Of a stretch of 64,000 nt of DNA, positions 17,662-64,000 are shown in pieces. The stretch is taken from positions 124,001-188,000 of IMG/VR virus record IMGVR_UViG_3300032288_004964. One strand, written 5' to 3'. A program made the translations under genes and the position numbers. A model generated the notes under the pieces. It was not told where the DNA came from, searched no databases, and was given only the letters and a program-made list of their open reading frames with translations. How positions within the stretch are numbered: the stretch's first letter is position 1; every line of letters begins with the position of its first letter.

Positions 17662-18095
17662 TATTTCTTTTTTTCGTGTCTTTCTTTAGCTTCTTCTACT
17701 TTTCTTTTCATCTTATCTTTATAAGATTCTTCTTTTTCAACACCAAGTTCTTTAGCCTTTTTGTCATATTCTTTTTGAAGTTCTTTGATTCTTTTAGCTA
17801 ATTCTTCAAGTTCTTTTTTACTATTAGCATCAACTGACTCATTGAATTCTTCTTCTTTAACATCTAAGTCAAAATAGTTTTTTAGAACTTTAATAGTGTC
17901 TACATCATTTGCCATATACCATAATTCTGGTGGAAGTAAAGAAACTTTTTGATCAGCTATTAACTCACCTAATTCAGCTTCATTTGAAAATAATTCAGCT
18001 TCAGTTTCATTAATATCTAATTTAGCAGATCCATTTGTTTGAGGTCCGGGAACTTGTTTATTTTCATTTACAAACTGATTGTATTTCTTTATCAT
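17661..18095 (-). CDS. Hypothetical protein with CTS-like N-terminus
   Basis: Starts MIKKYNQFVNE; internal FNE-S. Confidence 0.7.
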   Translation of the reverse strand: MIKKYNQFVNENKQVPGPQTNGSAKLDINETEAELFSNEAELGELIADQKVSLLPPELWYMANDVDTIKVLKNYFDLDVKEEEFNESVDANSKKELEELAKRIKELQKEYDKKAKELGVEKEESYKDKMKRKVEEAKERHEKKK

Positions 18096-48076: not shown

Positions 48077-50365
48077 ATGAGTTATAGTTACGATAGATTC
48101 TTAAGACCGATAACATCAACCGATAGAAATATACAAATCTTAGATAATACTGGTATTATTAAATATACTATTAATCCATTTTCTGTCGTTGAGTCGATGG
48201 TTTCTAATAATTTATTAAAAATTAATATAAAGGGTGCTAGAATTATAACTATAAACTTTTCTACATCCAATGAAGCTAAGTTAGCTTTACCTAGATTACA
48301 ACAGCAAATTGATACATTAACTCAGAAAGTACCACTTGTAATTGATAAAGATATAAAAAATTATATAGATAGTGTAGTTGGAAATACTGGCACAAGTGGT
48401 TCATCTGGATCATCTGGTACATCTGGTGTTGATGGTACTTTTTATGGGTCAAGTGGATCTTCTGGTGTAAATGGCACATCTGGTGTTTCTGGTGCTACTG
48501 GTGCTACTGGATCTAATGGATCATCTGGTACATCTGGTACATCTGGTATATCTGGTGGATCTTATGATTATAGTAATGGAATAACTTTAACTGGATTAAC
48601 TGTTAGTTTAGGTGGTACACTTAGTCAAACCGTGATATTAAATGGTGATCTAAATGATTTACTTTTCACAGGATTTGATAACTTGGTTTTTACTAGTTCT
48701 GTATTTGATGTTGTTTCTGATCTTATTAGTTTAGATTCAAATGATTCTACTCAAATATTATCTATTAATGATATTACAATAAATGCTGGTGGTCAAATAT
48801 CTTTAAGTGGTGATTCTGGATTGGTTTCCATTGGAAATACACAAGGTTTAGTTTATCAATCTGATTATAAATTAGGATTTGTAACACACTCATTAGTTGA
48901 TAAGGGTTATGTGGATTTCGCAATTGAAGGTGTGTCTAAATACAGAGGAACTTCTAGTACTCAAATTGTTGTACCTGAAGCTGGATATGTTGTAACATTT
49001 ACTACACAAACTAATTTAGCTTATACACCTGGTGAAACTATTGTAATGTATGATACCTATCCAAACCTATATATGATTGATGATTATGTAGAAGATGGTG
49101 TTAGTGGTAATATAATAGGTACAGTTGATTCATATAATATACTTACTGGTAGTATATCAGTTGTTGTTGATTATTCAGAATCTATTGGTAATACATATAG
49201 TTATTGGTATATAAATTTAAGTGGTAAAACTGGTGTTGGTTTAATTGGAGCTACTGGAGCTACAGGTTTCAGTGGTACTAATGGTACTTCTGGTACAAGT
49301 GGGTCATCTGGTACAAGTGGATCATCTGGTACAAGTGGATCATCTGGGACATCAGGTTCTAGTGGAACATATGGTTCTAGTGGATCATCTGGGACATCAG
49401 GTTCTTCTGGTCCTTCTGGTTTATCTGGTACTTCTGGTACATCCGGTACTTCTCAAAATGTTTCTGCTAGTTATATGAGAGGTTCTCGTTCTACTCAACA
49501 AACCACTAATTTAACTATTAATAGTTTAGTTGCCTTTACCCAAACTGATAATTCAACTGGATCTGATATATCATTGAACACATCAACTGGTCAAATTACA
49601 CTTGCTGCAAATAGAACTTATAGATTATTAGCTCAAGTACCAACTTGGGAAGGATTGAGTGGTGCTAGACCATCTTTTAGATGGTATGATGAAACGTCAG
49701 CCTCTTATATAGGTAGTTTATCAGCCGCTTATAATCCAGGTGATGCTGGTGCTTATGGTGCATTTGGTGGCACATCCGATGTTGTTATCACAACAACACA
49801 AACAACAGTTGTTTCTTTTAGAATAGTTAATGGTACTAACTTATCTGGACTAGGTGGTAACGGTGATTTTAGTACAGGTGGTTCTTATCCTTGGTTTGAT
49901 ATTGAAGTTATATCTGGATATGTACCAATAGTTAATGATACAAGTTTATCTTTATCAGAAACACTTACAGTTACTGGTACTGCTTCTTTTAATGGATTAA
50001 CTGTTTTACAAGAAGTATCTGAAGTTATAAATTCAACACCTGGGGCTACTGCATCAACTGTTATATATGACTTCTCAACAGGTTCTAATTGGTATCATTC
50101 ATCTGCTACTACTAACTATACTGCTAATTTTACAAATATTCCAACAGATAATAATAGAGCAACAACTGTTACTATAGTTATAAATCAAGGTTCAACTGCT
50201 TATATACCAACTGCTGTTCAAATAGGTGGTACTCCATCAACTGTTAAATGGGCTGGTGGTACTGCTTCTGGGAATGCTAATCAAGTCGATATAGTTGGAT
50301 TTACATTTATTAGAAGTGGTAATGCCTGGGCTCAAGTCTTAGGACAAATAAACACTTTTGATTAA
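48077..50365 (+). CDS. Collagen-like (Gly-Thr/Ser-Ser) fibre protein
   Basis: Two G-X-Y tracts (GTS/GSS/GAT); C-terminal VKWAGG..GNANQVDIVG..QVLGQ domain. Confidence 0.75.
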   Translation: MSYSYDRFLRPITSTDRNIQILDNTGIIKYTINPFSVVESMVSNNLLKINIKGARIITINFSTSNEAKLALPRLQQQIDTLTQKVPLVIDKDIKNYIDSVVGNTGTSGSSGSSGTSGVDGTFYGSSGSSGVNGTSGVSGATGATGSNGSSGTSGTSGISGGSYDYSNGITLTGLTVSLGGTLSQTVILNGDLNDLLFTGFDNLVFTSSVFDVVSDLISLDSNDSTQILSINDITINAGGQISLSGDSGLVSIGNTQGLVYQSDYKLGFVTHSLVDKGYVDFAIEGVSKYRGTSSTQIVVPEAGYVVTFTTQTNLAYTPGETIVMYDTYPNLYMIDDYVEDGVSGNIIGTVDSYNILTGSISVVVDYSESIGNTYSYWYINLSGKTGVGLIGATGATGFSGTNGTSGTSGSSGTSGSSGTSGSSGTSGSSGTYGSSGSSGTSGSSGPSGLSGTSGTSGTSQNVSASYMRGSRSTQQTTNLTINSLVAFTQTDNSTGSDISLNTSTGQITLAANRTYRLLAQVPTWEGLSGARPSFRWYDETSASYIGSLSAAYNPGDAGAYGAFGGTSDVVITTTQTTVVSFRIVNGTNLSGLGGNGDFSTGGSYPWFDIEVISGYVPIVNDTSLSLSETLTVTGTASFNGLTVLQEVSEVINSTPGATASTVIYDFSTGSNWYHSSATTNYTANFTNIPTDNNRATTVTIVINQGSTAYIPTAVQIGGTPSTVKWAGGTASGNANQVDIVGFTFIRSGNAWAQVLGQINTFD

Positions 50366-50366
50366 T

Positions 50367-52847
50367 ATGTTTAGTAGATTATCATCATTTTCAGGACCAT
50401 TATCGCCTGTTTTTAGACTACCAGGTGGATTTACACTTAATGGTTTAATTTTAAGATATGTTATAGGAGATACTAACTCTTATTCAGGAACTAGTAGTGT
50501 CATCGACTTACAAGGTAATTCTAATGGAACTTTATACAATGGACAAGATATTGTTGGTATTGGTCCAACATATTCACTTAATGGTTACTTAAATTTTGAT
50601 GGAGTCAATGATTATATTATGACAAATACATCACTTAATTCTAAATTGTCACCAGCAAATACATCAACAATAATATCACATTTTATTTGGATATATCCTC
50701 AGGATAATGGTGTTATTGTCACTGAACAAGGTGATACATCTTTAAATGGTGTTGGTTGGCATGATTCACAAATTGAAATAGTTTCAGGAACATTAAAGTT
50801 TGGTGTTTGGAATGGTATAATTATATCTTCGTCTATTTCAATATCTTTATATAATTGGTACTATGTTGGCTTAACTTATGATGGAATAACACTAAGAGGT
50901 TATGTAAATGGTCAACTTGCCGGATCTATTACTGGTAGTAGATCAACTCCTCAATCAGCTGGTAATGGACTACATTATGCTATTGGTGCTAATGATGGTA
51001 CAAGTTTAGGTGACGGTAGTTATGCTAAAATGAAACTTGGTGATTTTCATGTTTATAATACAGCTCTTAGTCAACAACAAATTCTTAATAATTACAATGC
51101 TACTAAAAATGATTATATTTATACAGGTAGTATGTCTATTTGGATTGATGCGAATGACCCAGCGAGTTTTTCAGGTGGTTCAATTAGTGATTTGAGTGGT
51201 AATGGTTATACACACTCTTTAGTTGCTACTTCATCTACAATATTTGGTTTCAAGTCTTTTAATTGCACAGCGGTGTCAAATAATTATATAAGAGTAAACG
51301 GAACAGGTCCATTATTACCTACATCAGGTTATACATATGTTGCTTGGGCAAGAATTTCAGCAGATTCTTCTACATATAGAACATTATATAGAAGTTCTCC
51401 AAATGATCATGCTCTTTTAGTTCAAATAAATACTGATAATTTAGGATTTTGGGATAATGATTCAAATTCTTTTAAAGATTCTGGTTATGATGTAAGCTCA
51501 ATTGAAGAAAAATGGGTTCAATATTCGGTAGTTGGTGATTCATCTAGTAGTATATTCTATATAAATGATGTAGAAGTTGGTGCAACCAATTCCGGTGCTA
51601 GTGGTAATAGACATGATTACTTTGGTGGTATTGATGGACAACCTTTTGGTTATGTTGGTAATATGATGTTATATAATAAAAAATTATCTCAATCTGAAAT
51701 TAAACAAAATTATGATGCTCTTAAAAATGTTTATAAGAATGGTGATTTTGTAATTAGTAATATAGGTATATCTTTACTACCGTCTAATGCTGGTAGTACT
51801 ATTTGGTCCGATTCAAAAGGCAATTTTAATGCCACAATGTCAGGATCGCCATCATATAATAATACTGGTTATACATTTAATGGAACTTCTCAGTATGGTA
51901 GAATTGTTAGTTCTACAGGTATTACCGATTTTACAAATACAAATAATTATACTATCGAGGTATGGACTAAACCATCTTCAGGACAACCAAATTCAACAAC
52001 AACCATTTTGGAAAAATGGAATTTAGGAAATTCATCAAATTATCCTTATACATTAAGATTTACTGAAGGTTCAAGTACTGCTTATTTTGCTTGTTATGAT
52101 GGAACTAATTTCCCTCAAGGTACTTTAACCGGAGTTTCAGTAGGTAACTGGTATCAATTAGTTGGTGTTTTTAATTTCACCACTGATGTTTTAACAGTTT
52201 ATAAAAATGGTATTTCTGCTGGAACTGCAAGTTTAGTTGGGGTTGGTGGTTTAAGTAATACAAGTCCTGTGGGAATTGCTCATAGAGTAAGTATTGACGG
52301 ATCATCTGCTGAGTTTATGTTTAAGGGTTCAATTGGTATTATAAGAATTTATAGTTCTGCTCTCAGCGCCTCTGATGTATCTAAAAACTTTGAGGCAAAT
52401 AGAAATATTTATGGAATTTCAGACTCGATCACTACAACTACTACGACTGTTGCTCCGACAACTACAACTACTACGACTGTTTTTCAAGGTGGTCCAATAA
52501 GTGAAATCTCCGTTAATCTTGGAATTAATGGTGTTGTTTATACACTAGCTGATGGACATGATTTTGAAAGTGGTCCTTTCGAACAAATGTTTTCAACAAC
52601 TACACTAAATATGTTTACTGCGTTAACCAATTATTTAGGTGATACACCTAATGCTGAATTTAATTTAGATATTACTCAAGTATTTGATAATCAAGGAAAT
52701 CTAGATGGTTATTCAATTAATTTATATCTAAGTACCCCAGGGAATGGATACAATGTTGGTGATATTATAACCATACCTGGAAGTGAAATTGGTGGAACCG
52801 ATAACACTGATGATGACTTAATAATAACTGTTACTTCAATATCATAG
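50367..52847 (+). CDS. Multi-LamG (concanavalin A-like) adhesin/fibre tip protein
   Basis: Three repeats of FDG..DY/FNG..Y...W..V...Y.NG...YN.ALS..I..NY; Thr-rich linker; start at MFSRLS (or 50358). Confidence 0.8.
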   Translation: MFSRLSSFSGPLSPVFRLPGGFTLNGLILRYVIGDTNSYSGTSSVIDLQGNSNGTLYNGQDIVGIGPTYSLNGYLNFDGVNDYIMTNTSLNSKLSPANTSTIISHFIWIYPQDNGVIVTEQGDTSLNGVGWHDSQIEIVSGTLKFGVWNGIIISSSISISLYNWYYVGLTYDGITLRGYVNGQLAGSITGSRSTPQSAGNGLHYAIGANDGTSLGDGSYAKMKLGDFHVYNTALSQQQILNNYNATKNDYIYTGSMSIWIDANDPASFSGGSISDLSGNGYTHSLVATSSTIFGFKSFNCTAVSNNYIRVNGTGPLLPTSGYTYVAWARISADSSTYRTLYRSSPNDHALLVQINTDNLGFWDNDSNSFKDSGYDVSSIEEKWVQYSVVGDSSSSIFYINDVEVGATNSGASGNRHDYFGGIDGQPFGYVGNMMLYNKKLSQSEIKQNYDALKNVYKNGDFVISNIGISLLPSNAGSTIWSDSKGNFNATMSGSPSYNNTGYTFNGTSQYGRIVSSTGITDFTNTNNYTIEVWTKPSSGQPNSTTTILEKWNLGNSSNYPYTLRFTEGSSTAYFACYDGTNFPQGTLTGVSVGNWYQLVGVFNFTTDVLTVYKNGISAGTASLVGVGGLSNTSPVGIAHRVSIDGSSAEFMFKGSIGIIRIYSSALSASDVSKNFEANRNIYGISDSITTTTTTVAPTTTTTTTVFQGGPISEISVNLGINGVVYTLADGHDFESGPFEQMFSTTTLNMFTALTNYLGDTPNAEFNLDITQVFDNQGNLDGYSINLYLSTPGNGYNVGDIITIPGSEIGGTDNTDDDLIITVTSIS

Positions 52848-53313: not shown

Positions 53314-54195
53314 ATGTATTCAATATTTCACATAGAAGGAGGAATTGGTAAGAATATTTTAGCAACCGCAGTTATTGATTCCCTCAAGAAAACAGACCCA
53401 GAAAGAAAAATCATTTTAGTTTCAGCTTGGCCTCAAGTTTGGTTTAACAACCCAAACATTGAACAAATATTCCCAATGGGTCAAGTCGCTAACTTTTATA
53501 AAAACTTTATCAAAGACCAAGATGTAAAAATATTCCGTGTTGATCCTTATCATACAGAAGATTATATCCTAAATAAAAAACATTTAATTGAAATTTGGTG
53601 TGATTTAGTTGGAGCTAAATATGATGGAGAACTACCTAAACTTTACTTTTCACCTTTAGAGTTGGAAGGAATTAGATCAAAAATTTTACAAGGAGTAAGT
53701 AAACCTATTTTTTTACTACACACAAATGGTGGTGGTTCTGGTCCTAAATCAAGACCTTATTCTTGGTATAGAGACATACCAATGCAAAATGCTGTAGATA
53801 TTGTTAACTACTTCAAAAATGATTATCATATCTATCAACTTGGATATCAAGGACAATCTTTAATACCAGGTTGTAATAAATTAACTTTAGAAACTAGAGA
53901 AATTTTAGCAGCTCCTCTTTTTTCTAAAAAGAGATTATTAATTGATTCTTTTTCTCAACATGCTTCAGTTGCACTTGGTATGCAATCAGTTGTTTGTTGG
54001 GTTGGAAATAAACCTGAGGTTTTAGGTTATGATAGTCATCTTAATATAAAACCTGTTGCTAAACCCGTATTTGACACTTACCACTCATCTTACTTAGATG
54101 ATTTTGATATTGGAGGTAATCCAGTTCAATTCCCTTATGATAAATTGAAAGTATTTGATTCAAACGAAATAATAAATAAATTATTAACATTATGA
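53314..54195 (+). CDS. Glycosyltransferase, GT9/heptosyltransferase-like (GT-B)
   Basis: GGIGKNILAT.VI..LK...P; F.NNPNI; LLIDSFSQHASVALG. Confidence 0.7.
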   Translation: MYSIFHIEGGIGKNILATAVIDSLKKTDPERKIILVSAWPQVWFNNPNIEQIFPMGQVANFYKNFIKDQDVKIFRVDPYHTEDYILNKKHLIEIWCDLVGAKYDGELPKLYFSPLELEGIRSKILQGVSKPIFLLHTNGGGSGPKSRPYSWYRDIPMQNAVDIVNYFKNDYHIYQLGYQGQSLIPGCNKLTLETREILAAPLFSKKRLLIDSFSQHASVALGMQSVVCWVGNKPEVLGYDSHLNIKPVAKPVFDTYHSSYLDDFDIGGNPVQFPYDKLKVFDSNEIINKLLTL

Positions 54196-54998
54196 GAAAA
54201 ATTCATTATATAGGTGGTCTACCGAGAAGTGGGTCAACTTTATTAACAAACATTCTTTTACAGAATCCAAAATTTGCTACAACAGCAACATCTTCTCTTT
54301 TAGACTTTCTCTTACAAGTAAGAGATAATTGGAATAAATTAGAAGGACATAAAGTTTATGAAGAAGGCCAGGATAAATGGGCAGTTATCAGAGCAATTAT
54401 GTATAACTATCACAAAACTGATAAAGAAGTTATCTTCGATAAAAACAGAGGTTGGTCTACACATATTGAATTTATGGAAAAAGCAACTGGTGAAGGAGTT
54501 AAAATAATTGCTTGTGTTAGAAATCTTGAAGATATCTGTTCTTCTTTTGAAAAACTATTTAGAAAGAATAGAGCTGATGGTGAAATACACGGTGAATTTT
54601 CTAATCCTAAAATGAAAAATAGAGAAGGTAGAGTTGGTGTTTGGACATCAGATGAAGGAGTTATAGGAAGACCTTATATTTCTTTATTAGATACAATCCA
54701 AAGAGGTTTAGGTGATAGAATATTATTCTTCCCATATGAAGAATGGTCATCTAATCCTGACTTCTGGTTTAAGAAATTATATGAGTTTGTAGGTGAAGAA
54801 TATTACCAACATGATTTTAATAATATCGAACAAGTTATTAGAGAAAATGATGCTGGTTATGGTTGGGGATCTGATTTGCATGAAATTAAAAATGGTAGAT
54901 TATTACCAGCTAAATCAGATGCTATTGAAATATTAGGTAGAGATTGGTTTGTTAAATTACATGACACAGAATTCTGGAAGACTAAGAAAAAGAAATAA
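54192..54998 (+). CDS. PAPS-dependent sulfotransferase
   Basis: 5'-PSB loop GLPRSGSTLL; 3'-PB IIACVRN..DI.SS; YEE...P. Confidence 0.85.
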   Translation: MRKIHYIGGLPRSGSTLLTNILLQNPKFATTATSSLLDFLLQVRDNWNKLEGHKVYEEGQDKWAVIRAIMYNYHKTDKEVIFDKNRGWSTHIEFMEKATGEGVKIIACVRNLEDICSSFEKLFRKNRADGEIHGEFSNPKMKNREGRVGVWTSDEGVIGRPYISLLDTIQRGLGDRILFFPYEEWSSNPDFWFKKLYEFVGEEYYQHDFNNIEQVIRENDAGYGWGSDLHEIKNGRLLPAKSDAIEILGRDWFVKLHDTEFWKTKKKK

Positions 54999-54999
54999 T

Positions 55000-55032
55000 A
55001 AAAAAACCTCTCAAATTTGAGAGGTTTTTTTT
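55000..55032. terminator. Bidirectional intrinsic terminator
   Basis: AAAAAACCTCTCAAATTTGAGAGGTTTTTT palindrome. Confidence 0.85.
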
Positions 55033-55237
55033 ATTCATCCATTTTAATAAATTTATACCAAAATCTTTCATGTATAAAGTAGATAATAGGTTTTAAGACT
55101 AACTCACTAACACCTAATAAAGAAGCAATTTTAAGAGGTGCCCCTAACAATGTAGCTGTTATAACTGTTGTTAAAGTTCCTAAAATTCTATATGTTATAG
55201 TTTTATAAAGGTGTCTCTTTATAGCTTTATCCTTCAT
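55031..55237 (-). CDS. DUF2061-like small membrane protein
   Basis: RHLYKTITYRILGT...K.IIYFIHER.W. Confidence 0.8.
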   Translation of the reverse strand: MKDKAIKRHLYKTITYRILGTLTTVITATLLGAPLKIASLLGVSELVLKPIIYFIHERFWYKFIKMDE

Positions 55238-55685
55238 TTACCATTAGATTTTTTATTACATCTTCTTGTATAGACTCGTGAACCATTGTTCTCCAAGAAT
55301 CATCACCATTCTTAATAGAATCTCTGATTTTTGTAGCTGAGATAAATGCGATGTCACCTGGAGGTGTAAACTCATTTATTTCATAACCAACACCTCTTCC
55401 ATAATTAACAGATTCAATATCAGGGATAATCATTACTTTAACATCATCATTTTTAGCAGCATGATACTTCTCAATCATTTCTACTGTTTGTTCAGTTGTA
55501 AAAGGATTCTTTTCATCTGGTTCGATGTCTCTAACCATAATTAAAGCTGGTATACCTGCATCTAATTTTTGTTGAATTAATTCAATATGTCCATAATGAT
55601 AAGGTTGGTATCTACCTACAAAGATAGCATACTTTTTATCTGGATTCTTAGTGGGTTCTCCACCGTGATTTACTTTTGACCACAT
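55227..55685 (-). CDS. HxGH nucleotidyltransferase (cytidylyltransferase-like)
   Basis: FVGRYQPYHYGH; NPF; YGRGVGY; ISATKIR. Confidence 0.8.
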   Translation of the reverse strand: MWSKVNHGGEPTKNPDKKYAIFVGRYQPYHYGHIELIQQKLDAGIPALIMVRDIEPDEKNPFTTEQTVEMIEKYHAAKNDDVKVMIIPDIESVNYGRGVGYEINEFTPPGDIAFISATKIRDSIKNGDDSWRTMVHESIQEDVIKNLMVNEG

Positions 55686-55686
55686 A

Positions 55687-56268
55687 TTATTTGTTATTTT
55701 TTAATATTAACTCAGTAAGAAAGTTTACATTTTTTTCTAAATCTTCTTCTGTGTTATTTTTTAGTACTGTTGCATTTTGAGGAGTTTCAAAAGGAGATGA
55801 GATTCCTGTAAATTCTTTAATTTCACCAGCTCTTGCTTTTTTGTAAAGACCTTTAGGGTCTCTAGTTTCACAAGTAGAAAGTTCAGCATCAATGAAAATT
55901 TCCATAAATCCTTCACCAATAATTTCTTTAGCTTGGTTTCTATTCTTTTCAAATGGAGAGATAAAAGAACAGATTACAATTAGACCAGCATCATTCATAA
56001 GTTTACAAACTTCTGAAACCCTTCTAATGTTTTCTACTCTTGCTTCTTCTGAGAATCCTAAATCTTTGTTAAGACCCATTCTAGTGTTATCACCATCTAA
56101 AATATAGGTGTGATATCCCAAACTGATTAGTTTTTCTTCAACTAAATTAGCAATAGTTGATTTTCCTGAACCGGATAATCCAGACATCCAAATGGTACAA
56201 GCCTTTTGATTTTTGATAGATTCACGGTTTTCTTTTGTTGTTTTAAAATTGTGCGTAGTTATATTCAT
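55687..56268 (-). CDS. cysC: Adenylyl-sulfate (APS) kinase
   Basis: GLSGSGKST; LDGD..R; R.ENIRR; FISP; RDPKGLY.KAR.GEI..FTGI. Confidence 0.95.
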   Translation of the reverse strand: MNITTHNFKTTKENRESIKNQKACTIWMSGLSGSGKSTIANLVEEKLISLGYHTYILDGDNTRMGLNKDLGFSEEARVENIRRVSEVCKLMNDAGLIVICSFISPFEKNRNQAKEIIGEGFMEIFIDAELSTCETRDPKGLYKKARAGEIKEFTGISSPFETPQNATVLKNNTEEDLEKNVNFLTELILKNNK

Positions 56269-56371
56269 ATGAATTATATTTTACAGAGTCTATTTGTTTT
56301 AAAAAATCACATAAAAGAATTTTTTTACATTATAATTTTAATATATACTCTATAAAAAATATTTTTTAACT

Positions 56372-59300
56372 ATGCCAACACAAAGTTTAGTACTTAGAGG
56401 TTTAATCGGAAGAAGACTAACCATCGAAGAAATGGATGGAAACTTCACATATTTAGAGTCATTAGCTCAAGAACAAGGAGATCAACCAAATCATCAAATT
56501 GCAATAGGAACAGGCACTGGTCTGACTTCATCTGAAAATTTTACATTTGATTATGAGTGTAATAATTTAATATCAGGTAATAATACCATTTGTTCTTGTT
56601 CATCAGAATCTAGTATCATTGGTGGTAATAACAATTGTGTTACTTGTTCTTATGAATCTAGTATCATTGGTGGTCATAACAATTGTGTTGTTTGTTCAGG
56701 TGGATCAACAATCATTGGTGGTTTTAATAACACGGTTACCTACTGTGCTGATTATTCTTCAATTGTTGGTGGTAGAAATAATACTATAAATGGTAGTTGT
56801 TATTATAATACTTATTACTCTTCTATAGTTGGTGGTGAGTATAATACTATTGGTTTAGGATCTTGTGATGCTAGTATAATAGGTGGTTCAGATAATTCTG
56901 TTGATTATTCTTGTAAAGCTGGTATCTTTTCTGGTGTTAGTAGTCATATATGTGATTATTCAGAAAGATCTACTATCTTAGGAGGTTCTCAAGATAGAAT
57001 ATCAAATGAATCTTGTAGATCTACTATTGTTGGTGGTTTTAGAAACTGTATTGTTGATGGTTCTTGTAATTCATCTGTTATGTCTGGATGTTGTAATGAT
57101 ATCTGTTATGGATCAGACAACTCTGTGATATCTGGTGGTTATTGTAATGAGATATGTTGTTACTCTTGTGAGTCTTCTATTATTGGTGGTATTCGTAATA
57201 CAATTAATTGTCAAACTTGTCAATCTACTATTGTTGGTGGGTATTGTAATAGAATTTCAAGCAATGAAGGTTCTGTGGTTTTGGGTGGTCGTTATAATGA
57301 TGTTTGTTGTAGTTCAAACTACACTGTAATATCAGGTTCTAATAATAAAATTTGTTGTGAATCTTGTAATTCATCTATTCTTGGTGGTAATTTTAATATA
57401 GTAGACGGATATTCTTGTAATTCATCTATTATCGGTGGTCAATCTAACTGCATTTGTGGTTCTAATTATGTATCTGGTCCTTATTCTTGTAAGTGTGATT
57501 ATGGTTCTTGTAATTCAGTTATTCTTGGTGGATGTTGTAATCAAATAATTTGTGATTCAGACAACACATCAATTATTGGTGGATGTTGTAATCAAGTTGT
57601 TGGTGATGGTGGTTCTGGAAGAAACTCTATTGTAGGTGGTGCTGATAACACAATTTGTTATTCAGATCACTCGGCAATTATTGGAGGTGAACAAAACAAA
57701 ATTTATGGAGAATCAGATTATTCTGTTATTATTGGTGGATGTTATGGTTTTATTTATGAAACACAATACTCTGCTATAATTGGTGGATGTTGTAATACAA
57801 TATGTATAGGTGGTAATAATGGCAATGGATATGGTGTTATTTTAGGTGGTGGTTCCAATACTTTAAATTGCTATTCTAATAATTCTGGAATTCTAGGTGG
57901 ATATTGTAATACTATAGATTGTTACTCAACTAAATCATCAATTATTGGAGGTGAATCAAATTTAATTATTACAAGTGGTCTTACTGCTAGTGATAATTAT
58001 GGTGTTTATAATGTTTGTCTTGGTGGTAACTCAATTATTGGTGGTCTTACAAATAGTATCATTGATTCTGAAAACTCAGTTATCTTAGGTGGTACTGGTT
58101 TAACATTAGCTACTCAAAGTAACACTGTTTTAGTTCCTCACTTAAAAATTAATAATTTAGATGTTTGTAACTCAGATGATAGAATATTAGTATCTGATGC
58201 TTTTGGTAATATTAATTATAGAGAAGCTTCTACATTAGGTGGAGGTGGTTCATTCTATTCTTGTTGTAATACATTGGATAATACTTCGGTTTCAAATATT
58301 ATAGGCGGTTGTTATAACACAATATGTAATTCTTTTGAGAGTACTATAATCGGTGGTGAAAATAACTATTTATGTGAAGTTGGATTAGGATCTACTATTG
58401 TAGGTGGTATTTGTAATACAATTAATAATGGCGTAGATGCTTCTGGTATTTTTGCTGGTAGATGTAATAAAATTTGTGGAAATAGTGATGGAAATTATTA
58501 TTCAGCTATTATTGGTGGTTATTGTAACTTAATATCAGATGGTAATGAAAGTTCTGTAATCTTAGGTGGTTGTCGTAACTGTATATGTGATTATTCTTAC
58601 AATTCTATGATATCATCTGGGTGTTGTAATTATATATGTGAGTCTGATAGAACATCTATTATAGCGGGGCGTTGTAATACAATTTGTTGTTCTTCAGAGG
58701 ATTCTGTAATTATGGGTGGTTGTTATAATAGAATTGATAGAAACTCTGATAGATCATCTATTGTTGGTGGTGGTTGGAACTCAATTTGTACATATTCTTC
58801 TAGATCAGGTATTCTTGCTGGTTCTGGTAATCATATTTATGATGGATCTTGTCATTCTACAATTGTAGGTGGTCATTGTAACCATATTTATAATTATTCT
58901 TGTCATTCTACAATTGTAGGTGGTGAATGTAACACATTATATAATGACGCTATTAACTCTACAATCAATGGTGGATTTAGAAACTGCTTAGATAGTGTTT
59001 ATAACTCATCAATCTTAGGTGGATATAGAAACTGTGCTCACTATACAATCAACTCAACAATTGTTGGTGGATGTAGAAATATGATATATTATGGTTCTAA
59101 TGAAGGTGCTATATTAGGTGGTGGTTGTAATTCTATTTCTGGTAGTTCTTATCAAGCATCAATTGTTGGTGGTAGATGTAATGAAATAAACAATCATTCT
59201 CATGACTCTTCAATAATTGGGGGTTATAATAACTCAATTTATAGTTGTTCGGAAAAATCTACAATTGTTGGTGGTTTTGATAACTGTATTTGTTGTTCAA

Positions 59301-61402
59301 ATAACTCTGGTATAATTGGTGGTTATAATAATGAGATTTTTGAATCAAGTAGATCTTTAATCTTAGGTGGTTCAAATATGACTCTTAATAATGAAGATGA
59401 TACAGTTTTAGTAAATCGTCTTAAAATTGATACTCTTCAAAATGAACCAGGTGATACTAGAATTGTTACTGCTGATTCTGATGGTAGAATTAGATACAGA
59501 ACAGTTTCTGGTTTAGTTCCAGAATTTGGAGGTATTGTAAATGGCGCTACTAATTCAATGACTGGATTTATGAATAGTATTTATAACTCTAATAATGGTT
59601 CAGTTGTTGGTGGTTCTTATAATGGTGTAACATCTTCAAATTCATCTTCAATAATTGGAGGTGATGCTGGTGTAATTAGTTGTTCACCTGAATCAAGTAT
59701 TATTGGAGGTCAATGTAACACTATATGTTGTTACTCTTGTGACTCATCAATTATAGGTGGTTGTAACAACCACCTAAATTGTAGTTCTAGTTTATCATCT
59801 ATAATTGGTGGTGGTTGTAACACTATAAATTGTTTTTCTATTAGCTCAGCAGTAATTGGTGGTTATCGTAACTTTACATGTAATTACGCAATTGAATCAT
59901 CTGTAATTGGTGGTAGATGTAATAGTGTTTATAACACCTCTTGTAAATCATCTGTAATTGGTGGTTACTATAACTGTATTTATAATGGATCTTGTGAATC
60001 ATCTATTATTGGAGGTCGTGATAACTGTATTTATAACGGAGCTTGTGATTCATCTATCATCGGTGGTGAATGGAACAGAGTTGCTTGGGGTACTTATAAC
60101 TCAACAGTTATTGGCGGTGATTGGAATAGAGTATTCGATTCTTGTGGGGCATCAGTAGTTGGTGGAGCTGGTAATAGAGTAAATGAAACTTATAGATCTG
60201 GTATTTTTGAAGGACATTGTAATCATATTTGTTGTTATTCTGATGATTCTACTATTGTAGGTGGTCACTATAACTGTATTGAGTATTATTCTTGCCAATC
60301 TTCTATAATTGGTGGATGTTGTAATGAAATCTGTTGTACTAATTACGCTTCTATTGTAGGTGGTGCTTGTAACCATATCTGTCAGCGTTCTTATTATTCA
60401 TCTATACTTGGTGGATGTTATAACTGCGTTGTTGATTATTCTTGTTATTCATCTATCTTAGGTGGTGGAAGAAACTGTATTTATAACTCTGATTATACAT
60501 CTATAATTGGTGGTAGATACACTTGTTTAGATAACTCTGATTACTCATCTGTAATTGGTGGATGTTGTAATGGTATGTATAATTCAAGCTACTCATCTGT
60601 AATTGGTGGATGTTGTAATAGACAAACATATTCCGATTTAGCATCTATTGTTGGTGGATATTGTAACTGTATCTGGTCAGGTGATTGCTCAAGTATCATT
60701 GGTGGTTATGGTAATCGATTATGTGGTGGTTATTACGGTGATGACTCAAGAGGATCTTCAATTTTCGGTGGTAATTATAACTGTATGTATAATGGTGTTT
60801 GTAGATCTTCAATTATTGGCGGTTATAGTAATGAAATAAAATGTTACTCTTGTGATTCATCAATAATTGGTGGTTGTAATAATGGAATTTGTTGTGCTTC
60901 TTGTCAATCTTCTATTATTGGTGGTTGTAACAATTATATGTGCTGTTCTTGTAACTCAGTTATATTAGGTGGACAAGATTTAGATGTTTGTAATATAGAC
61001 AATACAGTATTCATGAATGGTACAACTTGGTTAAAACAAACAGTTGAGACATCATTTGAAACTACTGTAAGTGCTGCCACTTTTAGTGTTAACTTTTTAG
61101 AGGGTGGTATTAAATACTTATCATCATTAAGTAATGACTTCCAAGTTGACTTTACAAACTTTCCTGATCCTACTATTGCCAACTCTGTTATAACTTATAC
61201 ATTAATCTTAAATCAAGGTGTTACTCCTTATATGATTACTGGATTAACTATAAATGGTGGTGGTACTCAAACAATTAAGTGGAATGGTGGAAATGTTCCT
61301 ACCGGTAACGCTAATCAAGTTGATACAATAGGTTTAATGTTTGTTTATAATAGTACAGGTTTATTAAGTCAAGTATTGGGTCAAGTTGGAACATTTGCAT
61401 AA
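56372..61402 (+). CDS. Giant cysteine-rich repeat fibre protein (S-x-I-x-GG-x-x-N beta-solenoid)
   Basis: Dozens of 16-17-aa repeats; N-terminal LT..EMDGNF; C-terminal IKWNGG..GNANQVD..QVLGQ domain. Confidence 0.8.
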   Translation: MPTQSLVLRGLIGRRLTIEEMDGNFTYLESLAQEQGDQPNHQIAIGTGTGLTSSENFTFDYECNNLISGNNTICSCSSESSIIGGNNNCVTCSYESSIIGGHNNCVVCSGGSTIIGGFNNTVTYCADYSSIVGGRNNTINGSCYYNTYYSSIVGGEYNTIGLGSCDASIIGGSDNSVDYSCKAGIFSGVSSHICDYSERSTILGGSQDRISNESCRSTIVGGFRNCIVDGSCNSSVMSGCCNDICYGSDNSVISGGYCNEICCYSCESSIIGGIRNTINCQTCQSTIVGGYCNRISSNEGSVVLGGRYNDVCCSSNYTVISGSNNKICCESCNSSILGGNFNIVDGYSCNSSIIGGQSNCICGSNYVSGPYSCKCDYGSCNSVILGGCCNQIICDSDNTSIIGGCCNQVVGDGGSGRNSIVGGADNTICYSDHSAIIGGEQNKIYGESDYSVIIGGCYGFIYETQYSAIIGGCCNTICIGGNNGNGYGVILGGGSNTLNCYSNNSGILGGYCNTIDCYSTKSSIIGGESNLIITSGLTASDNYGVYNVCLGGNSIIGGLTNSIIDSENSVILGGTGLTLATQSNTVLVPHLKINNLDVCNSDDRILVSDAFGNINYREASTLGGGGSFYSCCNTLDNTSVSNIIGGCYNTICNSFESTIIGGENNYLCEVGLGSTIVGGICNTINNGVDASGIFAGRCNKICGNSDGNYYSAIIGGYCNLISDGNESSVILGGCRNCICDYSYNSMISSGCCNYICESDRTSIIAGRCNTICCSSEDSVIMGGCYNRIDRNSDRSSIVGGGWNSICTYSSRSGILAGSGNHIYDGSCHSTIVGGHCNHIYNYSCHSTIVGGECNTLYNDAINSTINGGFRNCLDSVYNSSILGGYRNCAHYTINSTIVGGCRNMIYYGSNEGAILGGGCNSISGSSYQASIVGGRCNEINNHSHDSSIIGGYNNSIYSCSEKSTIVGGFDNCICCSNNSGIIGGYNNEIFESSRSLILGGSNMTLNNEDDTVLVNRLKIDTLQNEPGDTRIVTADSDGRIRYRTVSGLVPEFGGIVNGATNSMTGFMNSIYNSNNGSVVGGSYNGVTSSNSSSIIGGDAGVISCSPESSIIGGQCNTICCYSCDSSIIGGCNNHLNCSSSLSSIIGGGCNTINCFSISSAVIGGYRNFTCNYAIESSVIGGRCNSVYNTSCKSSVIGGYYNCIYNGSCESSIIGGRDNCIYNGACDSSIIGGEWNRVAWGTYNSTVIGGDWNRVFDSCGASVVGGAGNRVNETYRSGIFEGHCNHICCYSDDSTIVGGHYNCIEYYSCQSSIIGGCCNEICCTNYASIVGGACNHICQRSYYSSILGGCYNCVVDYSCYSSILGGGRNCIYNSDYTSIIGGRYTCLDNSDYSSVIGGCCNGMYNSSYSSVIGGCCNRQTYSDLASIVGGYCNCIWSGDCSSIIGGYGNRLCGGYYGDDSRGSSIFGGNYNCMYNGVCRSSIIGGYSNEIKCYSCDSSIIGGCNNGICCASCQSSIIGGCNNYMCCSCNSVILGGQDLDVCNIDNTVFMNGTTWLKQTVETSFETTVSAATFSVNFLEGGIKYLSSLSNDFQVDFTNFPDPTIANSVITYTLILNQGVTPYMITGLTINGGGTQTIKWNGGNVPTGNANQVDTIGLMFVYNSTGLLSQVLGQVGTFA

Positions 61403-61419
61403 AAAAAATTAAGAAATAG

Positions 61420-64000
61420 ATGTTAAGTAAACTATCAACGCATTTAGGACCAGGTTCTCTCTTTTCAGGAGATGAACCACTAGTATTGGAATTTAGTAAT
61501 TCAACTTGGATAAGTACAAATGTTGGTACTTATTCATTAGTTGATGCTTGGAATGAATTTTTTGTAACCATAGAAACACCATTCAAAGATGTAAGTATTG
61601 ATGGTAATAAAATTTCACTAATTGGTGGTAAAGATTTAGAATTAAAAACTAGTTGTTTTAGTAGTAGTGACTTAGTTTCAATTAAAGATAATTCTAGAAT
61701 AATTACAACATTAGGTACTTATTCATTTGATGATTGTTCATTATTAACAGATGCTACCTTAAAAGGAGTTACTTATTCGTATGGTGGATCTTTTAGAGAT
61801 AATGTGAGTTTAACAACTATAATTCTTCCTAATTTACAAGAGATTTTAGGTGATGGTTATTTCTTTTATAATTGTGGATCTGTTAGTAACTTCAATTTAC
61901 CTTTACTTAATAGTATATCAGGTGTTTCTAACTTTTATAATTGTAATAGTATGTCAACTTTAAATTTACCTGTTTGTACTACTTTAGGTGATACAGTACT
62001 TAATAATGATAACTTTGATTCTATTACTGGTAAAACAATAGATTTGACAGTAACTCCTGAATTACTTACTTGTAATGGTGGTACTCCAGATGTTGATATA
62101 CAATATCTACAATCTAATAACACAGTAACTATTCATATACCAACTTCAATTACTTCATTTACTCCAACATCAGCTACTTTCTCAGGTACAACTGTTAGTG
62201 TTGTGGGTAAAGGATTCTACGCCATTGATTCAGTAAAAATAGGTGGAGTTGAAGTTGCGACTTATTCACTTGATAGTTTTACTAATTTAAGTTTAGTTAC
62301 AGGTACTGTTTCAGATGGTTCTGTTTCAATTACTGGTACTTATGGTTCAGCTTCCAAATCTGGATTTGAATGGGATGCTACCGTTAAGTTTAGTTATATT
62401 GCCACTCCTTTAAATGTTTTACCAAATACTTGGACTGATTTATCGTCTTACTATAAAGATTTAGAAATTAAATCAGGCGTATCACTTGATACACTATATT
62501 CAGTTTTATTTGATGGTAGTAATTCAGGATATGGAACTTCAAGTCAAATGACTGTAAAATACACAAATGGATTTACAATAGAAACTTGGGTTAATTTCTC
62601 ATCATTAACATCTGCTAATTATATAATGCAGTTTGTTGATCAAGATTATACAAATACTAATCCAGATTTAACTCTACTTACTATTGATAATGATTTAAGA
62701 ATTCAATCAAGTAATTCTGTTAGTTTTTCTACTAATATAACTGCTAATAAATTCATCAAGGCTGTTGTTACATATGATTCATCAAATGGTGAAACTAAAA
62801 CATATATAAATGGTCAATTAACAAATACTAGTACACTTAATTTATCCACAAGCTATAAGAAAACAATTGGTAAACTTTTTGTTGGTAATATAGGATCTAA
62901 TCAACCTATGAGAATAGGCATGTTAAACTTTGTAAATTATATACAAGATTCAACAACTATTCTTAATAATTATAACAATGAAAGAAACACTTATGATGAA
63001 GCTAAAGGAAGTTTCTTATTTAATTCATCAAGTAGTCAATACTTATCATCTAGCTCACCTGATTATGTAATTGGTACAAATAGCTTTACTTTAGAAGCAT
63101 TTGTTAAAACAACATCTCAAAGCGGTTATGATGGTGTGATTTCAATGTTAGATAACAATGCTCCATTTAATGGTGTTTCTATTAATATTTTTGATGGTAA
63201 TTTTGACTTCTATTCTAAAGGTGGTCAATATACTTCATATACTGCTTCTAATGATACATGGTACCATGTTGCTATAGCAAGAGATAATGGAACTATAAGT
63301 TATTTTGCTAATGGTAGATTGGTAGCTCAATACTCTGATTCTTATAATTATACTCTTCAAGATTTAGTTATAGGTAGATATTATACAGATCTTAATGACC
63401 ACTATATAGATGGTGTTATTGCACAACCTAGATTAACAATAGGCACTGCATTATATAATGGTACATTTAGTGTAACTCCTCCATTAACAAGCGGTTCTAA
63501 TACTAAATTATTATTATTAGATGCTTATAATAACCAATTATTAGATTCTTCTGGACTTACACACTCTGTTATCTCTAATAATAATGTTGGTTGGACAAGT
63601 AGTTTACCTTCAACTATAGGAAGTACTTATGTACAAGATGCTCTTCAGTTTTATGTAGATGCTTCATTAAATACATCTTATCCTGGTTCAGGTACAATTT
63701 GGTATGATATATCAGGAAACTCAAGAGATCTTTCTTGGGGTTATGGATTAACTTATGATTCTGCAAATGGTGGTAATATTCATTTTGATGGTACTAATAG
63801 AGCACTAAGTGGTTCTAACTATACAATTAACTTCTCTAATGGAATTACGGTTGAGGCGGTTGCTAAATATCATTCAGGTTTTTATGGTGGTGTATTTGCA
63901 TTCAATGGTGGTGGTGACTATATTAATGTTCAATTTATGTCTTCTGGTACACAACTTAGATTTGAGCTTGATGCGGGTCAATCCTTATACACAACTGGAG
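61420..64000 (+). CDS. Adhesin/fibre tip protein: BspA-like LRR, IPT/TIG and LamG domains; 3' partial (absent from the ORF track)
   Basis: ATG 61420 (MLSKLSTHLGP), frame open to window end; F.NC..L....LP repeats; ITSFTPTS...G..VSVVGKGF; FTIETWV/FTLEAFV...WYHVA. Confidence 0.8.
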   Translation, partial: MLSKLSTHLGPGSLFSGDEPLVLEFSNSTWISTNVGTYSLVDAWNEFFVTIETPFKDVSIDGNKISLIGGKDLELKTSCFSSSDLVSIKDNSRIITTLGTYSFDDCSLLTDATLKGVTYSYGGSFRDNVSLTTIILPNLQEILGDGYFFYNCGSVSNFNLPLLNSISGVSNFYNCNSMSTLNLPVCTTLGDTVLNNDNFDSITGKTIDLTVTPELLTCNGGTPDVDIQYLQSNNTVTIHIPTSITSFTPTSATFSGTTVSVVGKGFYAIDSVKIGGVEVATYSLDSFTNLSLVTGTVSDGSVSITGTYGSASKSGFEWDATVKFSYIATPLNVLPNTWTDLSSYYKDLEIKSGVSLDTLYSVLFDGSNSGYGTSSQMTVKYTNGFTIETWVNFSSLTSANYIMQFVDQDYTNTNPDLTLLTIDNDLRIQSSNSVSFSTNITANKFIKAVVTYDSSNGETKTYINGQLTNTSTLNLSTSYKKTIGKLFVGNIGSNQPMRIGMLNFVNYIQDSTTILNNYNNERNTYDEAKGSFLFNSSSSQYLSSSSPDYVIGTNSFTLEAFVKTTSQSGYDGVISMLDNNAPFNGVSINIFDGNFDFYSKGGQYTSYTASNDTWYHVAIARDNGTISYFANGRLVAQYSDSYNYTLQDLVIGRYYTDLNDHYIDGVIAQPRLTIGTALYNGTFSVTPPLTSGSNTKLLLLDAYNNQLLDSSGLTHSVISNNNVGWTSSLPSTIGSTYVQDALQFYVDASLNTSYPGSGTIWYDISGNSRDLSWGYGLTYDSANGGNIHFDGTNRALSGSNYTINFSNGITVEAVAKYHSGFYGGVFAFNGGGDYINVQFMSSGTQLRFELDAGQSLYTTG

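What the first reader, a model, noticed from the sequence alone, without database searches (positions are those of the whole stretch)
56372..61402. 1676-aa fibre with roughly 10% cysteine, in a genome segment carrying cysK and tRNA-Cys
16-17-aa S-x-I-x-GG-x-(C)-N-x-I-C repeats, many with CC pairs, give well over 100 Cys by eye. Three repeat blocks are separated by similar neck motifs (NTVLVPHLKI..DDRILVSD..G.I.YR / DTVLVNRLKI..DTRIVTAD..G.I.YR). A near-exact 51-bp duplication at about 58849-58925 shows ongoing expansion. Stacked Cys ladders in a cytoplasmically assembled protein suggest disulfide locking after lysis or metal binding. CysK might supply the cysteine demand (inference).
Basis: partly seen in the sequence, partly recalled or inferred. 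Interest (0 to 1): 0.6.

Follow-up and report, generated by a model that had tools for sequence, protein, structure and literature searches.

The report
Cysteine-studded trimeric fibre of huge phage
A freshwater giant phage encodes a long three-stranded surface fibre, built like the sticky head of bacterial adhesins, whose outer face carries about 140 cysteines per chain; the link to cysK and tRNA-Cys does not hold, but a link to a phage sulfation gene pair turned up.

Summary
The ORF is real: window 56372-61402 (+), 1676 aa, 138 Cys (8.2%; 8.4-11.5% in the repeat blocks) against 1.2% for the phage's other long ORFs. It has about 77 repeats of 16-17 aa, three blocks, two neck motifs and Cys-free ends.

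The repeats are a UspA1/YadA-head-like beta-roll: profile against PDB sequences E 6e-21, structural Z 17.4. A homotrimer is predicted (0.92 against 0.00 for controls). Cys never sits in the core columns. It fills six variable columns at 18-44% occupancy each, and 20 of 24 tested lie outside the trimer interface.

Orthologues in two other huge phages keep the density (7.8% and 9.4%). Single sites turn over like other surface residues (56% kept at 67% identity), there is no pair covariation, and at most half could pair rung to rung. So selection acts on the density of exposed thiols, not on a fixed disulfide ladder.

No tRNA-Cys exists in the window or the genome. A cysK-like gene lies 35 kb upstream, but the most Cys-rich orthologue sits in a 98%-complete genome without cysK (0 of 48 related records have it).

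An APS kinase plus sulfotransferase cassette flanks the fibre gene in all five related loci, and its presence tracks fibre Cys content across IMG/VR records.

Verdict: a new variant of a known kind of fibre. The role of the Cys is unresolved.

The parts
56372..61402 (+). Fibre gene, 1676 aa, 138 Cys
   Evidence: ORF and translation; composition; orthologues in G001 and G028
56372..56557 (+). Cys-free N-terminal domain (aa 1-62), presumed virion attachment end
   Evidence: 0 Cys; conserved with G001 and 52% identical to the G028 orthologue; no Pfam or PHROG match
56558..58126 (+). Repeat block 1 (aa 63-585), 16/17-aa beta-roll rungs, 9.6% Cys
   Evidence: weak LbR_Ice_bind match, E 2.6e-4, below cut-off
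58121..58219 (+). Neck 1 (aa 584-616)
   Evidence: motif found by pattern search here and in homologues
58289..59401 (+). Repeat block 2 (aa 640-1010), 8.4% Cys; modelled as a single-chain beta-roll and as a homotrimer
   Evidence: AF2 pLDDT above 90 over about 300 residues; UspA1 and BpaC heads are the top structural matches; trimer score 0.92 against 0.00 for controls
59399..59497 (+). Neck 2 (aa 1010-1042), predicted to be intertwined among the three chains
   Evidence: nearly every residue of 1010-1049 is in inter-chain contact in the trimer model
59594..61006 (+). Repeat block 3 (aa 1075-1545), 11.5% Cys
61007..61399 (+). Cys-free C-terminal domain (aa 1546-1676), the best-conserved part
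   Evidence: 65-75% identical in nine orthologues while the shaft is 42-46% identical; tblastn matches at the C-termini of cyanophage and actinophage fibre-region proteins; fold not obtained
58827..58947 (+). 51-nt period tandem array, 2.4 copies, 84% matches, with a 27-nt exact repeat
59743..59818 (+). Site of one-rung (51-nt) copy-number variants in natural populations
   Evidence: contigs of runs X2 and X4
55687..56268 (-). APS kinase (cysC), divergent neighbour of the fibre gene
   Evidence: PF01583 219.8 bits, NF003013 248 bits, both above cut-off; same position in G001, G028 and the P0008 and P0003 contigs
55227..55685 (-). Small nucleotidyltransferase-like gene (CTP_transf_like / NMN adenylyltransferase-like)
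54192..54998 (+). PAPS-type sulfotransferase (Sulfotransfer_3 / Sulfotransfer_1)
   Evidence: phrog_27463, E 1.8e-41; conserved in all five related loci
53314..54195 (+). 293-aa protein of unknown function; its end overlaps the sulfotransferase start
   Evidence: a gene of 291-293 aa holds the same place in the relatives
20081..20953 (-). cysK-like cysteine synthase, 35 kb upstream; not linked to the fibre
   Evidence: absent from G028 and from 48 other records
48077..52847 (+). Upstream fibre-module genes: collagen-repeat tail-fibre-like protein and Laminin_G_3 protein
61420..63999 (+). Downstream LRR_5 + Laminin_G_3 protein; runs off the window end

Best explanation
What it is (confidence about 0.85):
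- A virion fibre of a 385-kb, 28.7% GC freshwater phage.
- Three chains each fold into a beta-roll of 16-17-residue rungs of the kind seen in the heads of trimeric autotransporter adhesins (UspA1/YadA type).
- The shaft has three such segments joined by two intertwined necks. A Cys-free N-terminal end presumably docks on the particle. A conserved Cys-free C-terminal domain forms the far end.

Where the Cys are (model-based):
- Only at the variable, outward-pointing rung positions.
- About five in six lie on the solvent-exposed face of the trimer; the rest (column 8) lie in the groove between chains.
- That gives roughly 400 thiols per fibre.

How it most likely works (inferred, confidence about 0.35-0.4):
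- The protein folds and trimerises in the reducing cytoplasm with free thiols.
- After lysis into oxygenated water, neighbouring exposed thiols oxidise into a redundant, non-stereotyped set of disulfides. These would form between stacked rungs, at column 8/17 between chains, and possibly between fibres.
- This would stiffen and protect a long thin adhesin.
- What selection keeps is thiol density, not particular pairs.

cysK is not part of this. The conserved neighbours are an APS kinase and a sulfotransferase.
For: Identity:
- Family profile against PDB sequences hits the UspA1 head at E 6.4e-21.
- AF2 model has pLDDT above 90 over about 300 residues.
- The best structural matches are the UspA1 head (Z 17.4, 27% identity) and the BpaC head (Z 16.9).
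- Homotrimer score is 0.92 against a best control of 0.00. That mark was reached by 21 of 30 proteins solved as pairs of one chain and 0 of 23 solved as single chains. Partner pLDDT is 89-90 and the runs agree in 96% of contacts.
- Homologues are named tail fiber domain-containing protein, and several carry Peptidase_S74.
- The neighbours are collagen-like tail-fibre and LamG genes.

Cys placement:
- Column profile; strand map; 20 of 24 Cys outside the interface.

Selection on density:
- 138, 126 and 171 Cys in three orthologues at 50-67% identity.
- 4.2-5.6% Cys in eight more distant orthologues, against a family median of about 1%.
- The same columns are used in fibres with at least five different C-termini.

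Other:
- Local stacking: 36 same-column neighbour pairs against 22.3 expected.
- Habitat is freshwater, groundwater and plankton metagenomes from 10 studies.
- Precedent: reactive cysteines and transient disulfides in the assembly of the P22 tailspike, a cytoplasmically made trimeric beta-helix adhesin (PMC3357383).
Against: - No experiment and no coordinates. The positions rest on models.
- Cys is conserved no better than other surface residues (56%).
- Stacked Cys are not better conserved, and pairs are not co-retained.
- Within-rung co-occurrence of Cys is at chance.
- 43-58% of Cys in regular rungs have no same-column neighbour.
- Stacking enrichment is not significant in the two orthologues, and in this gene it may come from recent duplication of rungs.
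- Related shafts fold with about 0-1% Cys, so Cys is not needed for the fold.
- No DsbA, glutaredoxin or Erv1-like oxidase is found in the three genomes, only a thioredoxin. The Erv1 search had no positive control.
Confidence: 0.4

Rival explanations
1. Metal or mineral binding. The exposed lattice of thiolates, spaced about 4.8 A between rungs and about 6.8 A along a strand, with CC, CxC and CxxC motifs, chelates soft metal ions or adheres to metal-bearing surfaces. This would either stabilise the fibre or serve attachment.
For: - Conservation of density rather than of positions fits a multivalent binding surface.
- Most Cys are solvent exposed.
- Motif counts: 19 CC, 7 CxC, 12 CxxC.
- The flat outer sheet resembles ice-binding beta-rolls, which use ordered surface arrays: 3ult Z 10.6, and PF21300 at E 2.6e-4, below cut-off.
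Against: - His is scarce (1.1%).
- Cys motifs within a rung co-occur only at chance.
- No metal-handling genes were seen beside the gene.
- I found no precedent in phage fibres.
Confidence: 0.2
2. The fibre is a substrate of the neighbouring phage sulfation system. APS kinase makes PAPS, and the sulfotransferase, perhaps with the 293-aa partner, sulfates residues or attached glycans on the fibre. Cys richness is tied to that chemistry.
For: - The cassette (293-aa unknown, sulfotransferase, APS kinase) flanks the fibre gene in G000, G001, G028 and the P0008 and P0003 contigs, where fibre identity falls to about 42%.
- Among 50 IMG/VR records with this fibre family, 12 carry Sulfotransfer_3 and 10 an APS-kinase-like gene. 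These usually lie next to each other and within about 10 kb of the fibre.
- Fibre Cys is 2.9% with the sulfotransferase and 0.54% without it, p 6e-4. Both genes are present in 7 of 15 records with fibre Cys of 2% or more, against 1 of 35 below 2%.
- The direction is the same in a second set of 48 records: 2.5% against 0.88%, p 0.053.
- No PAPS reductase or cysE is present in the three genomes, so PAPS is not being fed into a phage-encoded cysteine pathway.
- The weak nearest solved sequences are all protein-tyrosine sulfotransferases (E 0.05-0.1).
Against: - The records are not phylogenetically independent, and conserved synteny alone could give the association.
- Known PAPS sulfotransferases act on O or N acceptors, not thiols (my own knowledge).
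- Tyr content shows no association (p 0.36).
- One complete genome has two sulfotransferases and, at the sampled locus, a Cys-poor fibre.
- The PDB hits are not significant.
Confidence: 0.15
3. Cysteine supply. The phage carries cysK (and cysC) to meet the cysteine demand of making this fibre.
For: - The gene holds 11% of the Cys codons of the genome's long ORFs.
- A cysK-like gene is present in G000 and in its close relative G001.
- APS kinase lies on the sulfate assimilation route.
Against: - G028 has a fibre with 171 Cys (9.4%) in a 98%-complete genome with no PALP gene; 0 of 48 other records with the fibre family have one.
- No cysE, cysH or cysD is present in the three genomes.
- cysK is a common phage auxiliary gene in phages of many habitats, and has been proposed to yield sulfide from cysteine (10.1101/2021.01.05.425418).
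- No tRNA-Cys.
Confidence: 0.05
4. No specific role. Cys richness is a tolerated compositional quirk of fast-evolving surface positions: TGT is one step from TAT, TCT, AGT and GGT in an AT-rich genome.
For: - Cys sites turn over as fast as other surface residues, and C/Y exchanges are the commonest.
- 131 of the 138 Cys codons are TGT.
Against: - A seven-fold excess over the proteome is kept in three orthologues at 50-67% identity, and 4-6% in eight more.
- The two paralogous fibres in the same genome have only 2.0-2.3% Cys under the same mutational regime.
Confidence: 0.1

Closest known systems
Head domains of trimeric autotransporter adhesins (UspA1 of Moraxella, PDB 3pr7/3ntn; BpaC 7o23; YadA-like heads)
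   Same: - Rung motif (S-T-I-G-G-x-x-N-x-A type), rung length, beta-roll fold, predicted homotrimer, and a neck after each head segment.
- Evidence: profile E 6.4e-21 and Z 17.4 at 27% identity; trimer model.
   Different: - No signal peptide region or C-terminal membrane-anchor barrel was detected.
- No coiled-coil stalk.
- 8% Cys on the exposed face.
- From my own knowledge: autotransporter passengers are notably poor in Cys because folded disulfide loops block secretion. A Cys-rich version is feasible only for a protein assembled in the cytoplasm, as a phage fibre is.
YadA-domain structural proteins and tail fibres of phages (cyanophages, phiEco32, My1 and others)
   Same: A virion protein with adhesin-head repeats. 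The presence of such proteins in phage particles has been shown by proteomics in cyanophage S-SZBM1 (PMC9146016).
   Different: - Far longer (1676 aa, three heads, two necks) and Cys-rich.
- The Pfam YadA_head model itself does not match.
Disulfide-braced beta-solenoid antifreeze proteins (Tenebrio and spruce budworm types; named from my own knowledge) and the Lolium ice-binding beta-roll (3ult)
   Same: A narrow solenoid with a flat outer sheet and, in the insect proteins, a high Cys fraction. 3ult aligns at Z 10.6 and 20% identity.
   Different: In the insect proteins, Cys occupies fixed positions in every coil and forms defined disulfides. Here no column exceeds 44% Cys and the pairs do not covary.
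P22 tailspike cysteine annulus
   Same: A cytoplasmically assembled trimeric beta-helix adhesin in which reactive thiols take part in assembly (PMC3357383).
   Different: P22 has a few specific C-terminal Cys that are reduced in the native state. Here there are hundreds of exposed shaft Cys, and none in the terminal domains.

Membership tests
Trimeric autotransporter adhesin (TAA) | YadA-like / UspA1-like head repeats forming a beta-roll | tested here: met
   A1 profile against the UspA1 head, E 6.4e-21. AF2 model with the top structural hits UspA1 (Z 17.4) and BpaC (Z 16.9). The Pfam YadA_head model itself gave no hit. Handedness was not checked.
Trimeric autotransporter adhesin (TAA) | Obligate homotrimer with neck connectors | tested here: met
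   In silico only. The score is 0.92 against a best control of 0.00, a mark reached by 21 of 30 proteins solved as pairs of one chain and 0 of 23 solved as single chains. Partner pLDDT is 89-90 and contact agreement 96%. The neck at 1010-1049 is in contact throughout.
Trimeric autotransporter adhesin (TAA) | C-terminal 12-stranded membrane-anchor barrel and export signal | tested here: not met
   No anchor family in Pfam scans of the whole protein or of the C-terminal piece. The C-terminus is instead a domain shared with phage fibre-region proteins. It is therefore not a TAA, only TAA-head-like.
Phage tail or virion fibre | Encoded in a structural (fibre) module | tested here: met
   It is flanked by a collagen-repeat protein that matches many tail-fibre PHROGs and by LamG proteins that match virion structural and baseplate PHROGs. 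Gene order is the same in five related loci.
Phage tail or virion fibre | Physically present in the virion and mediating adsorption | not testable with these tools
   The phage is uncultured, and no RNA or proteome data were found.
Disulfide-ladder beta-solenoids (insect antifreeze type) | Cys at fixed positions in every coil, paired and co-conserved | tested here: not met
   Occupancy is 18-44% per column. There is no within-rung co-occurrence. At most 38-51% could pair. There is no co-retention in the orthologue.
Cysteine synthase CysK/CysM (the upstream gene) | Full-length match to the family model above the curated cut-off | tested here: inconclusive
   TIGR01136 scores 328 bits against a cut-off of 344. 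PF00291 scores 233 bits against a cut-off of 35. Active-site residues were not examined.

The most novel reading that the evidence does not exclude
Phages of this group chemically modify their own Cys-rich fibre with a virus-encoded PAPS system (APS kinase plus a TPST-like sulfotransferase and a conserved 293-aa partner). That would be enzymatic sulfation of a virion protein in a bacteriophage, possibly capping or charging the thiol- and hydroxyl-rich surface. It would explain why fibre Cys content tracks the presence of the cassette.
Probability: 0.12. Interest if true: 0.85.

Novelty: new variant of a known kind. Interest (0 to 1): 0.58.

Why it matters
Adhesin-head repeats in phage fibres are known. 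A version carrying roughly 400 solvent-exposed thiols per trimer, kept at 8-9% Cys across diverged huge phages, has not been described in the papers I could search.

It poses a clear chemical question: how does a particle released into oxygenated water handle that many surface thiols? It also offers a natural scaffold with a regular thiol lattice.

The recurrent pairing of this fibre family with a phage APS kinase and sulfotransferase cassette suggests these 'sulfur metabolism' auxiliary genes may serve virion modification rather than host metabolism. That would change how cysC-type genes in viromes are read.

Tried and rejected
- **Family scans of the whole protein.** Pfam and NCBIfam gave no hits; PHROGs gave one weak unnamed family. 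Scans of the pieces gave only sub-threshold LbR_Ice_bind and UspA1_rep and no PHROG.
- **Single sequence against PDB.** No match. Only the family profile worked.
- **Foldseek against PDB.** Nothing at E below 1e-3, only generic beta-helices.
- **C-terminal domain fold.** pLDDT 48.8, unusable, so no fold search was made. The Atlas feature search gave only leads: YadA_head and Phage_phiTE_241_C.
- **The search for related loci.** The broad alignment had no conserved stretch. Block 3 alone found no relatives.
- **tblastn of the repeat block against GenBank phages.** No match, probably because of the low-complexity filter. The whole protein matched only through its C-terminal domain.
- **Paired Cys motifs within a rung.** None above chance.
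- **Disulfide enzymes.** No DsbA, glutaredoxin or Erv1-like gene. The Erv1 search had no positive control, so it is uninformative. A thioredoxin is present in all three genomes but is common in phages.
- **PHROG annotation of the large upstream ORFs.** Nothing useful.
- **Ruled out:** tRNA-Cys and cysK as supplier.
- **Limits and rules.** The big representative protein search was not used; it was not needed. No other genetic code was used. Read laying was given 5,501 letters.
Full report
**1. The observation**

The ORF at window 56372-61402 (+) is open for 1676 codons. It has 138 Cys (8.23%), 19 CC pairs, and is rich in Gly, Ser, Ile and Asn.

The window is part of a 385,333-bp virus record with 28.7% GC, estimated 95% complete. 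Its nearest GenBank relatives by DNA are uncultured phages of 634-642 kb. Among ORFs of 150 aa or more in that genome, mean Cys is 1.2%. This gene is the richest and holds 11% of all their Cys codons.

Anchoring on the hydrophobic-hydrophobic-G-G motif gives 77 rungs, 39 of 17 aa and 25 of 16 aa. They fall into three blocks:
- aa 63-585;
- aa 640-1010;
- aa 1075-1545.

The blocks are separated by two similar neck motifs at aa 584-616 and 1010-1042. The N-terminal 62 aa and the C-terminal 131 aa have no Cys.

The '51-bp duplication' is a 2.4-copy array with 84% matches, containing a 27-nt exact repeat.

Contigs from independent freshwater metagenomes show alleles that differ by exactly one 51-nt rung at 59743-59818.

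No tRNA gene is in the window. None of the genome's 37 tRNAs reads Cys. A cysK-like gene is at 20081-20953 (-).

**2. What it is**

Single-sequence family searches were blank. The word-based protein search found 536 relatives. Some are named tail fiber domain-containing protein, beta strand repeat-containing protein or trimeric autotransporter adhesin, and several carry the Peptidase_S74 chaperone domain.

The evidence for the fold is as follows.
- A profile of 58 aligned shaft segments matches the UspA1 head at E 6.4e-21. The match includes the onset of the neck.
- An AlphaFold2 model of aa 640-1140 is a confident single-chain solenoid, with pLDDT above 90 over about 300 residues.
- Foldseek found nothing specific.
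- The exhaustive structural search ranks the UspA1 head first (Z 17.4, rmsd 8.8, 238 aligned, 27% identity) and the BpaC head second (Z 16.9). CbpF, UspA1 head-plus-neck and the Lolium ice-binding beta-roll rank lower.

A three-copy prediction of aa 720-1050 scored 0.92 against a best control of 0.00. That mark was reached by 21 of 30 proteins solved as pairs of one chain and 0 of 23 solved as single chains. Partner pLDDT was 89-90 and the runs agreed in 96% of contacts. The calibration used two copies, not three, and the resemblance to solved adhesin heads may help the score.

In that model the neck residues 1010-1049 are in inter-chain contact almost throughout.

The genes around the ORF are fibre-module genes:
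- a collagen-repeat protein that matches many tail-fibre PHROGs;
- Laminin_G_3 proteins that match virion and baseplate PHROGs;
- an LRR plus LamG protein downstream.

The C-terminal domain is the best-conserved part, 65-75% identical among orthologues whose shafts are 42-46% identical. It recurs at the C-termini of proteins in the fibre regions of a T4-like cyanophage and an actinophage. Its fold could not be predicted.

I conclude that this is a homotrimeric virion fibre with a shaft like an adhesin head. It is not a trimeric autotransporter: no membrane anchor was found.

**3. Where the cysteines are and how they evolve**

In the 17-residue rung, Cys never occupies columns 2-7, 10, 12 or 16 (the S-S-I-I-G-G, N, I and S core). 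It occupies columns 8, 9, 11, 13, 14 and 17 at 18-44% each.

Mapping the model's strands and the trimer interface gives this picture:
- columns 1-3 and 5-8 face the neighbouring chains;
- column 4 is not in inter-chain contact and was taken, with columns 10, 12 and 16, as part of each roll's core;
- columns 9-15 and mostly 17 face solvent.

Of the 24 Cys in aa 727-1009, 20 are outside the interface and 4 (column 8) are inside it.

Orthologues keep the trait:
- G001: 1608 aa, 126 Cys, 7.8%, 67% identical;
- G028: 1818 aa, 171 Cys, 9.4%, same three blocks and two necks, different C-terminus;
- eight more distant orthologues: 4.2-5.6% Cys.

Fibres of the same repeat family with other C-termini use the same columns. 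The family median is about 1%. The two paralogous fibres in this genome have 2.0-2.3%.

Individual sites are not held. Only 56% of aligned Cys are Cys in G001, which is like Asp, Val or Gln and below the 67% average. C/Y is the commonest exchange.

Tests for pairing gave little:
- No pair of columns within a rung co-occurs above chance.
- Same-column neighbours on adjacent rungs are enriched here (36 against 22.3 expected, p below 0.001), but not in G001 (24 against 21) or G028 (45 against 38.5, p 0.09).
- At most 38-51% of the Cys in regular rungs could pair vertically.
- Stacked Cys are not better conserved (51% against 60%), and the two members of a pair are retained independently.

Selection thus appears to maintain the density of exposed thiols rather than a defined disulfide ladder.

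**4. The cysK idea and what replaced it**

cysK and cysC are common phage auxiliary genes (10.1101/2021.01.05.425418). A degenerate DNA pattern for two consecutive rungs retrieved IMG/VR loci with this fibre family.

None of 48 such records has a PALP/cysK gene. That set includes G028, a 464,605-bp record estimated 98% complete, which carries the most Cys-rich fibre. Only G000 and its syntenic relative G001 have cysK. The three genomes lack cysE and the PAPS reductase/CysD family.

By contrast, an APS kinase lies divergently next to the fibre gene in G000, G001 and G028. In those three, and in the contigs encoding the more distant P0008 and P0003, the local order is conserved:

LamG gene(s); 291-293-aa unknown; sulfotransferase; small minus-strand gene(s); APS kinase; fibre; LamG gene.

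In G001 the 293-aa gene and the sulfotransferase lie on the opposite strand.

Across 50 records with the fibre family:
- 12 carry Sulfotransfer_3 and 10 carry an APS-kinase-like gene;
- the two usually lie next to each other and within about 10 kb of the fibre locus;
- fibre Cys content is 2.9% with the sulfotransferase and 0.54% without it (p 6e-4);
- both genes occur in 7 of 15 records with fibre Cys of 2% or more, against 1 of 35 below 2%;
- Tyr shows no such link.

A second set of 48 records gave the same direction: 2.5% against 0.88%, p 0.053.

The sulfotransferase-positive loci span 29-43% GC, but shared ancestry was not corrected for. This is an association, not a demonstration.

**5. 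Mechanism**

*Shown:*
- the composition;
- the register of the Cys in the repeats;
- conservation of Cys density together with turnover of sites;
- the link to the sulfation cassette;
- the lack of a link to cysK.

*Model-based:*
- the beta-roll fold;
- the homotrimer;
- the exposure of the Cys.

*Inferred:*
- what the thiols do.

My ranking of the possible roles is:
- redundant oxidative cross-linking after release into oxygenated freshwater (habitat), about 0.35-0.4;
- metal or mineral binding, about 0.2;
- a tie to enzymatic sulfation, about 0.15;
- no specific role, about 0.1;
- cysteine supply by cysK, about 0.05.

**6. Novelty**

Adhesin-head repeats in phage structural proteins are known (PMC9146016). 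Reactive cysteines in the assembly of a phage adhesin are also known (PMC3357383). Literature searches found no description of Cys-rich fibres in jumbo or huge phages, nor of a fibre-linked phage sulfation cassette.

I file the finding as a new variant of a known kind. The sulfation link is the more novel lead.

Noticed in passing
window 53314-56268; also L010:2442-5604, L138:6783-10828, L139:7186-9906, L141:1347-4063: A conserved cassette sits inside the fibre module of five related huge-phage loci: a 293-aa unknown, a Sulfotransfer_3 enzyme, small minus-strand gene(s), and APS kinase. The same two enzymes recur near fibres of this family in about a fifth of 98 IMG/VR records, and their presence tracks fibre Cys content.
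   Followed up: partly
genome G000:C1:370132-370204 (outside the window): ARAGORN calls a tRNA with anticodon CTA, which would read the amber stop. It also calls three tRNAs with odd four-base anticodon readings (at 263450, 281611 and 282845) among 37 tRNAs. The window's long ORFs are open under table 11, so no recoding was assumed.
   Followed up: no
window 55227-55685 (-): A small nucleotidyltransferase (NMN adenylyltransferase-like / cytidylyltransferase-like N-terminal half) lies between the APS kinase and the sulfotransferase. In relatives that slot holds a DUF2061 membrane protein instead. Whether it could supply APS is unknown.
   Followed up: no
genome G000:C1:6184-10938 (+) and 246959-251848 (-): Two further fibres of about 1600 aa share related beta-roll repeats, mostly with an 18-aa period, and have different termini. 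They have only 2.0-2.3% Cys, so the phage carries at least three long fibres of this kind.
   Followed up: partly
L138:8944-9828 (G028): A GIY-YIG / NUMOD3 homing endonuclease gene is inserted in the sulfation cassette of the 465-kb relative. It is absent at that place in the window.
   Followed up: no
window 18092-18766 (-), 36898-37707 (-), 14695-15927 (-), 34544-35728 (+): Other genes seen while annotating: a protein with a SemiSWEET-like C-terminal half just downstream of cysK on the same strand (one ORF between them), PhoH, a RecA/Rad51-like ATPase, and a peptidase (phrog_4191).
   Followed up: no
L139:21815-22003 and L141:16199-16387: Relatives encode a ribosomal protein S21 homologue and a DnaJ protein a few kb downstream of the fibre module.
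   Followed up: no
window 56000-61500 in public runs: Near-identical copies of the gene occur in freshwater, groundwater, aquatic and plankton metagenomes from about 10 studies. They carry many single-base variants besides the one-rung indels. No RNA run holding it was found.
   Followed up: partly
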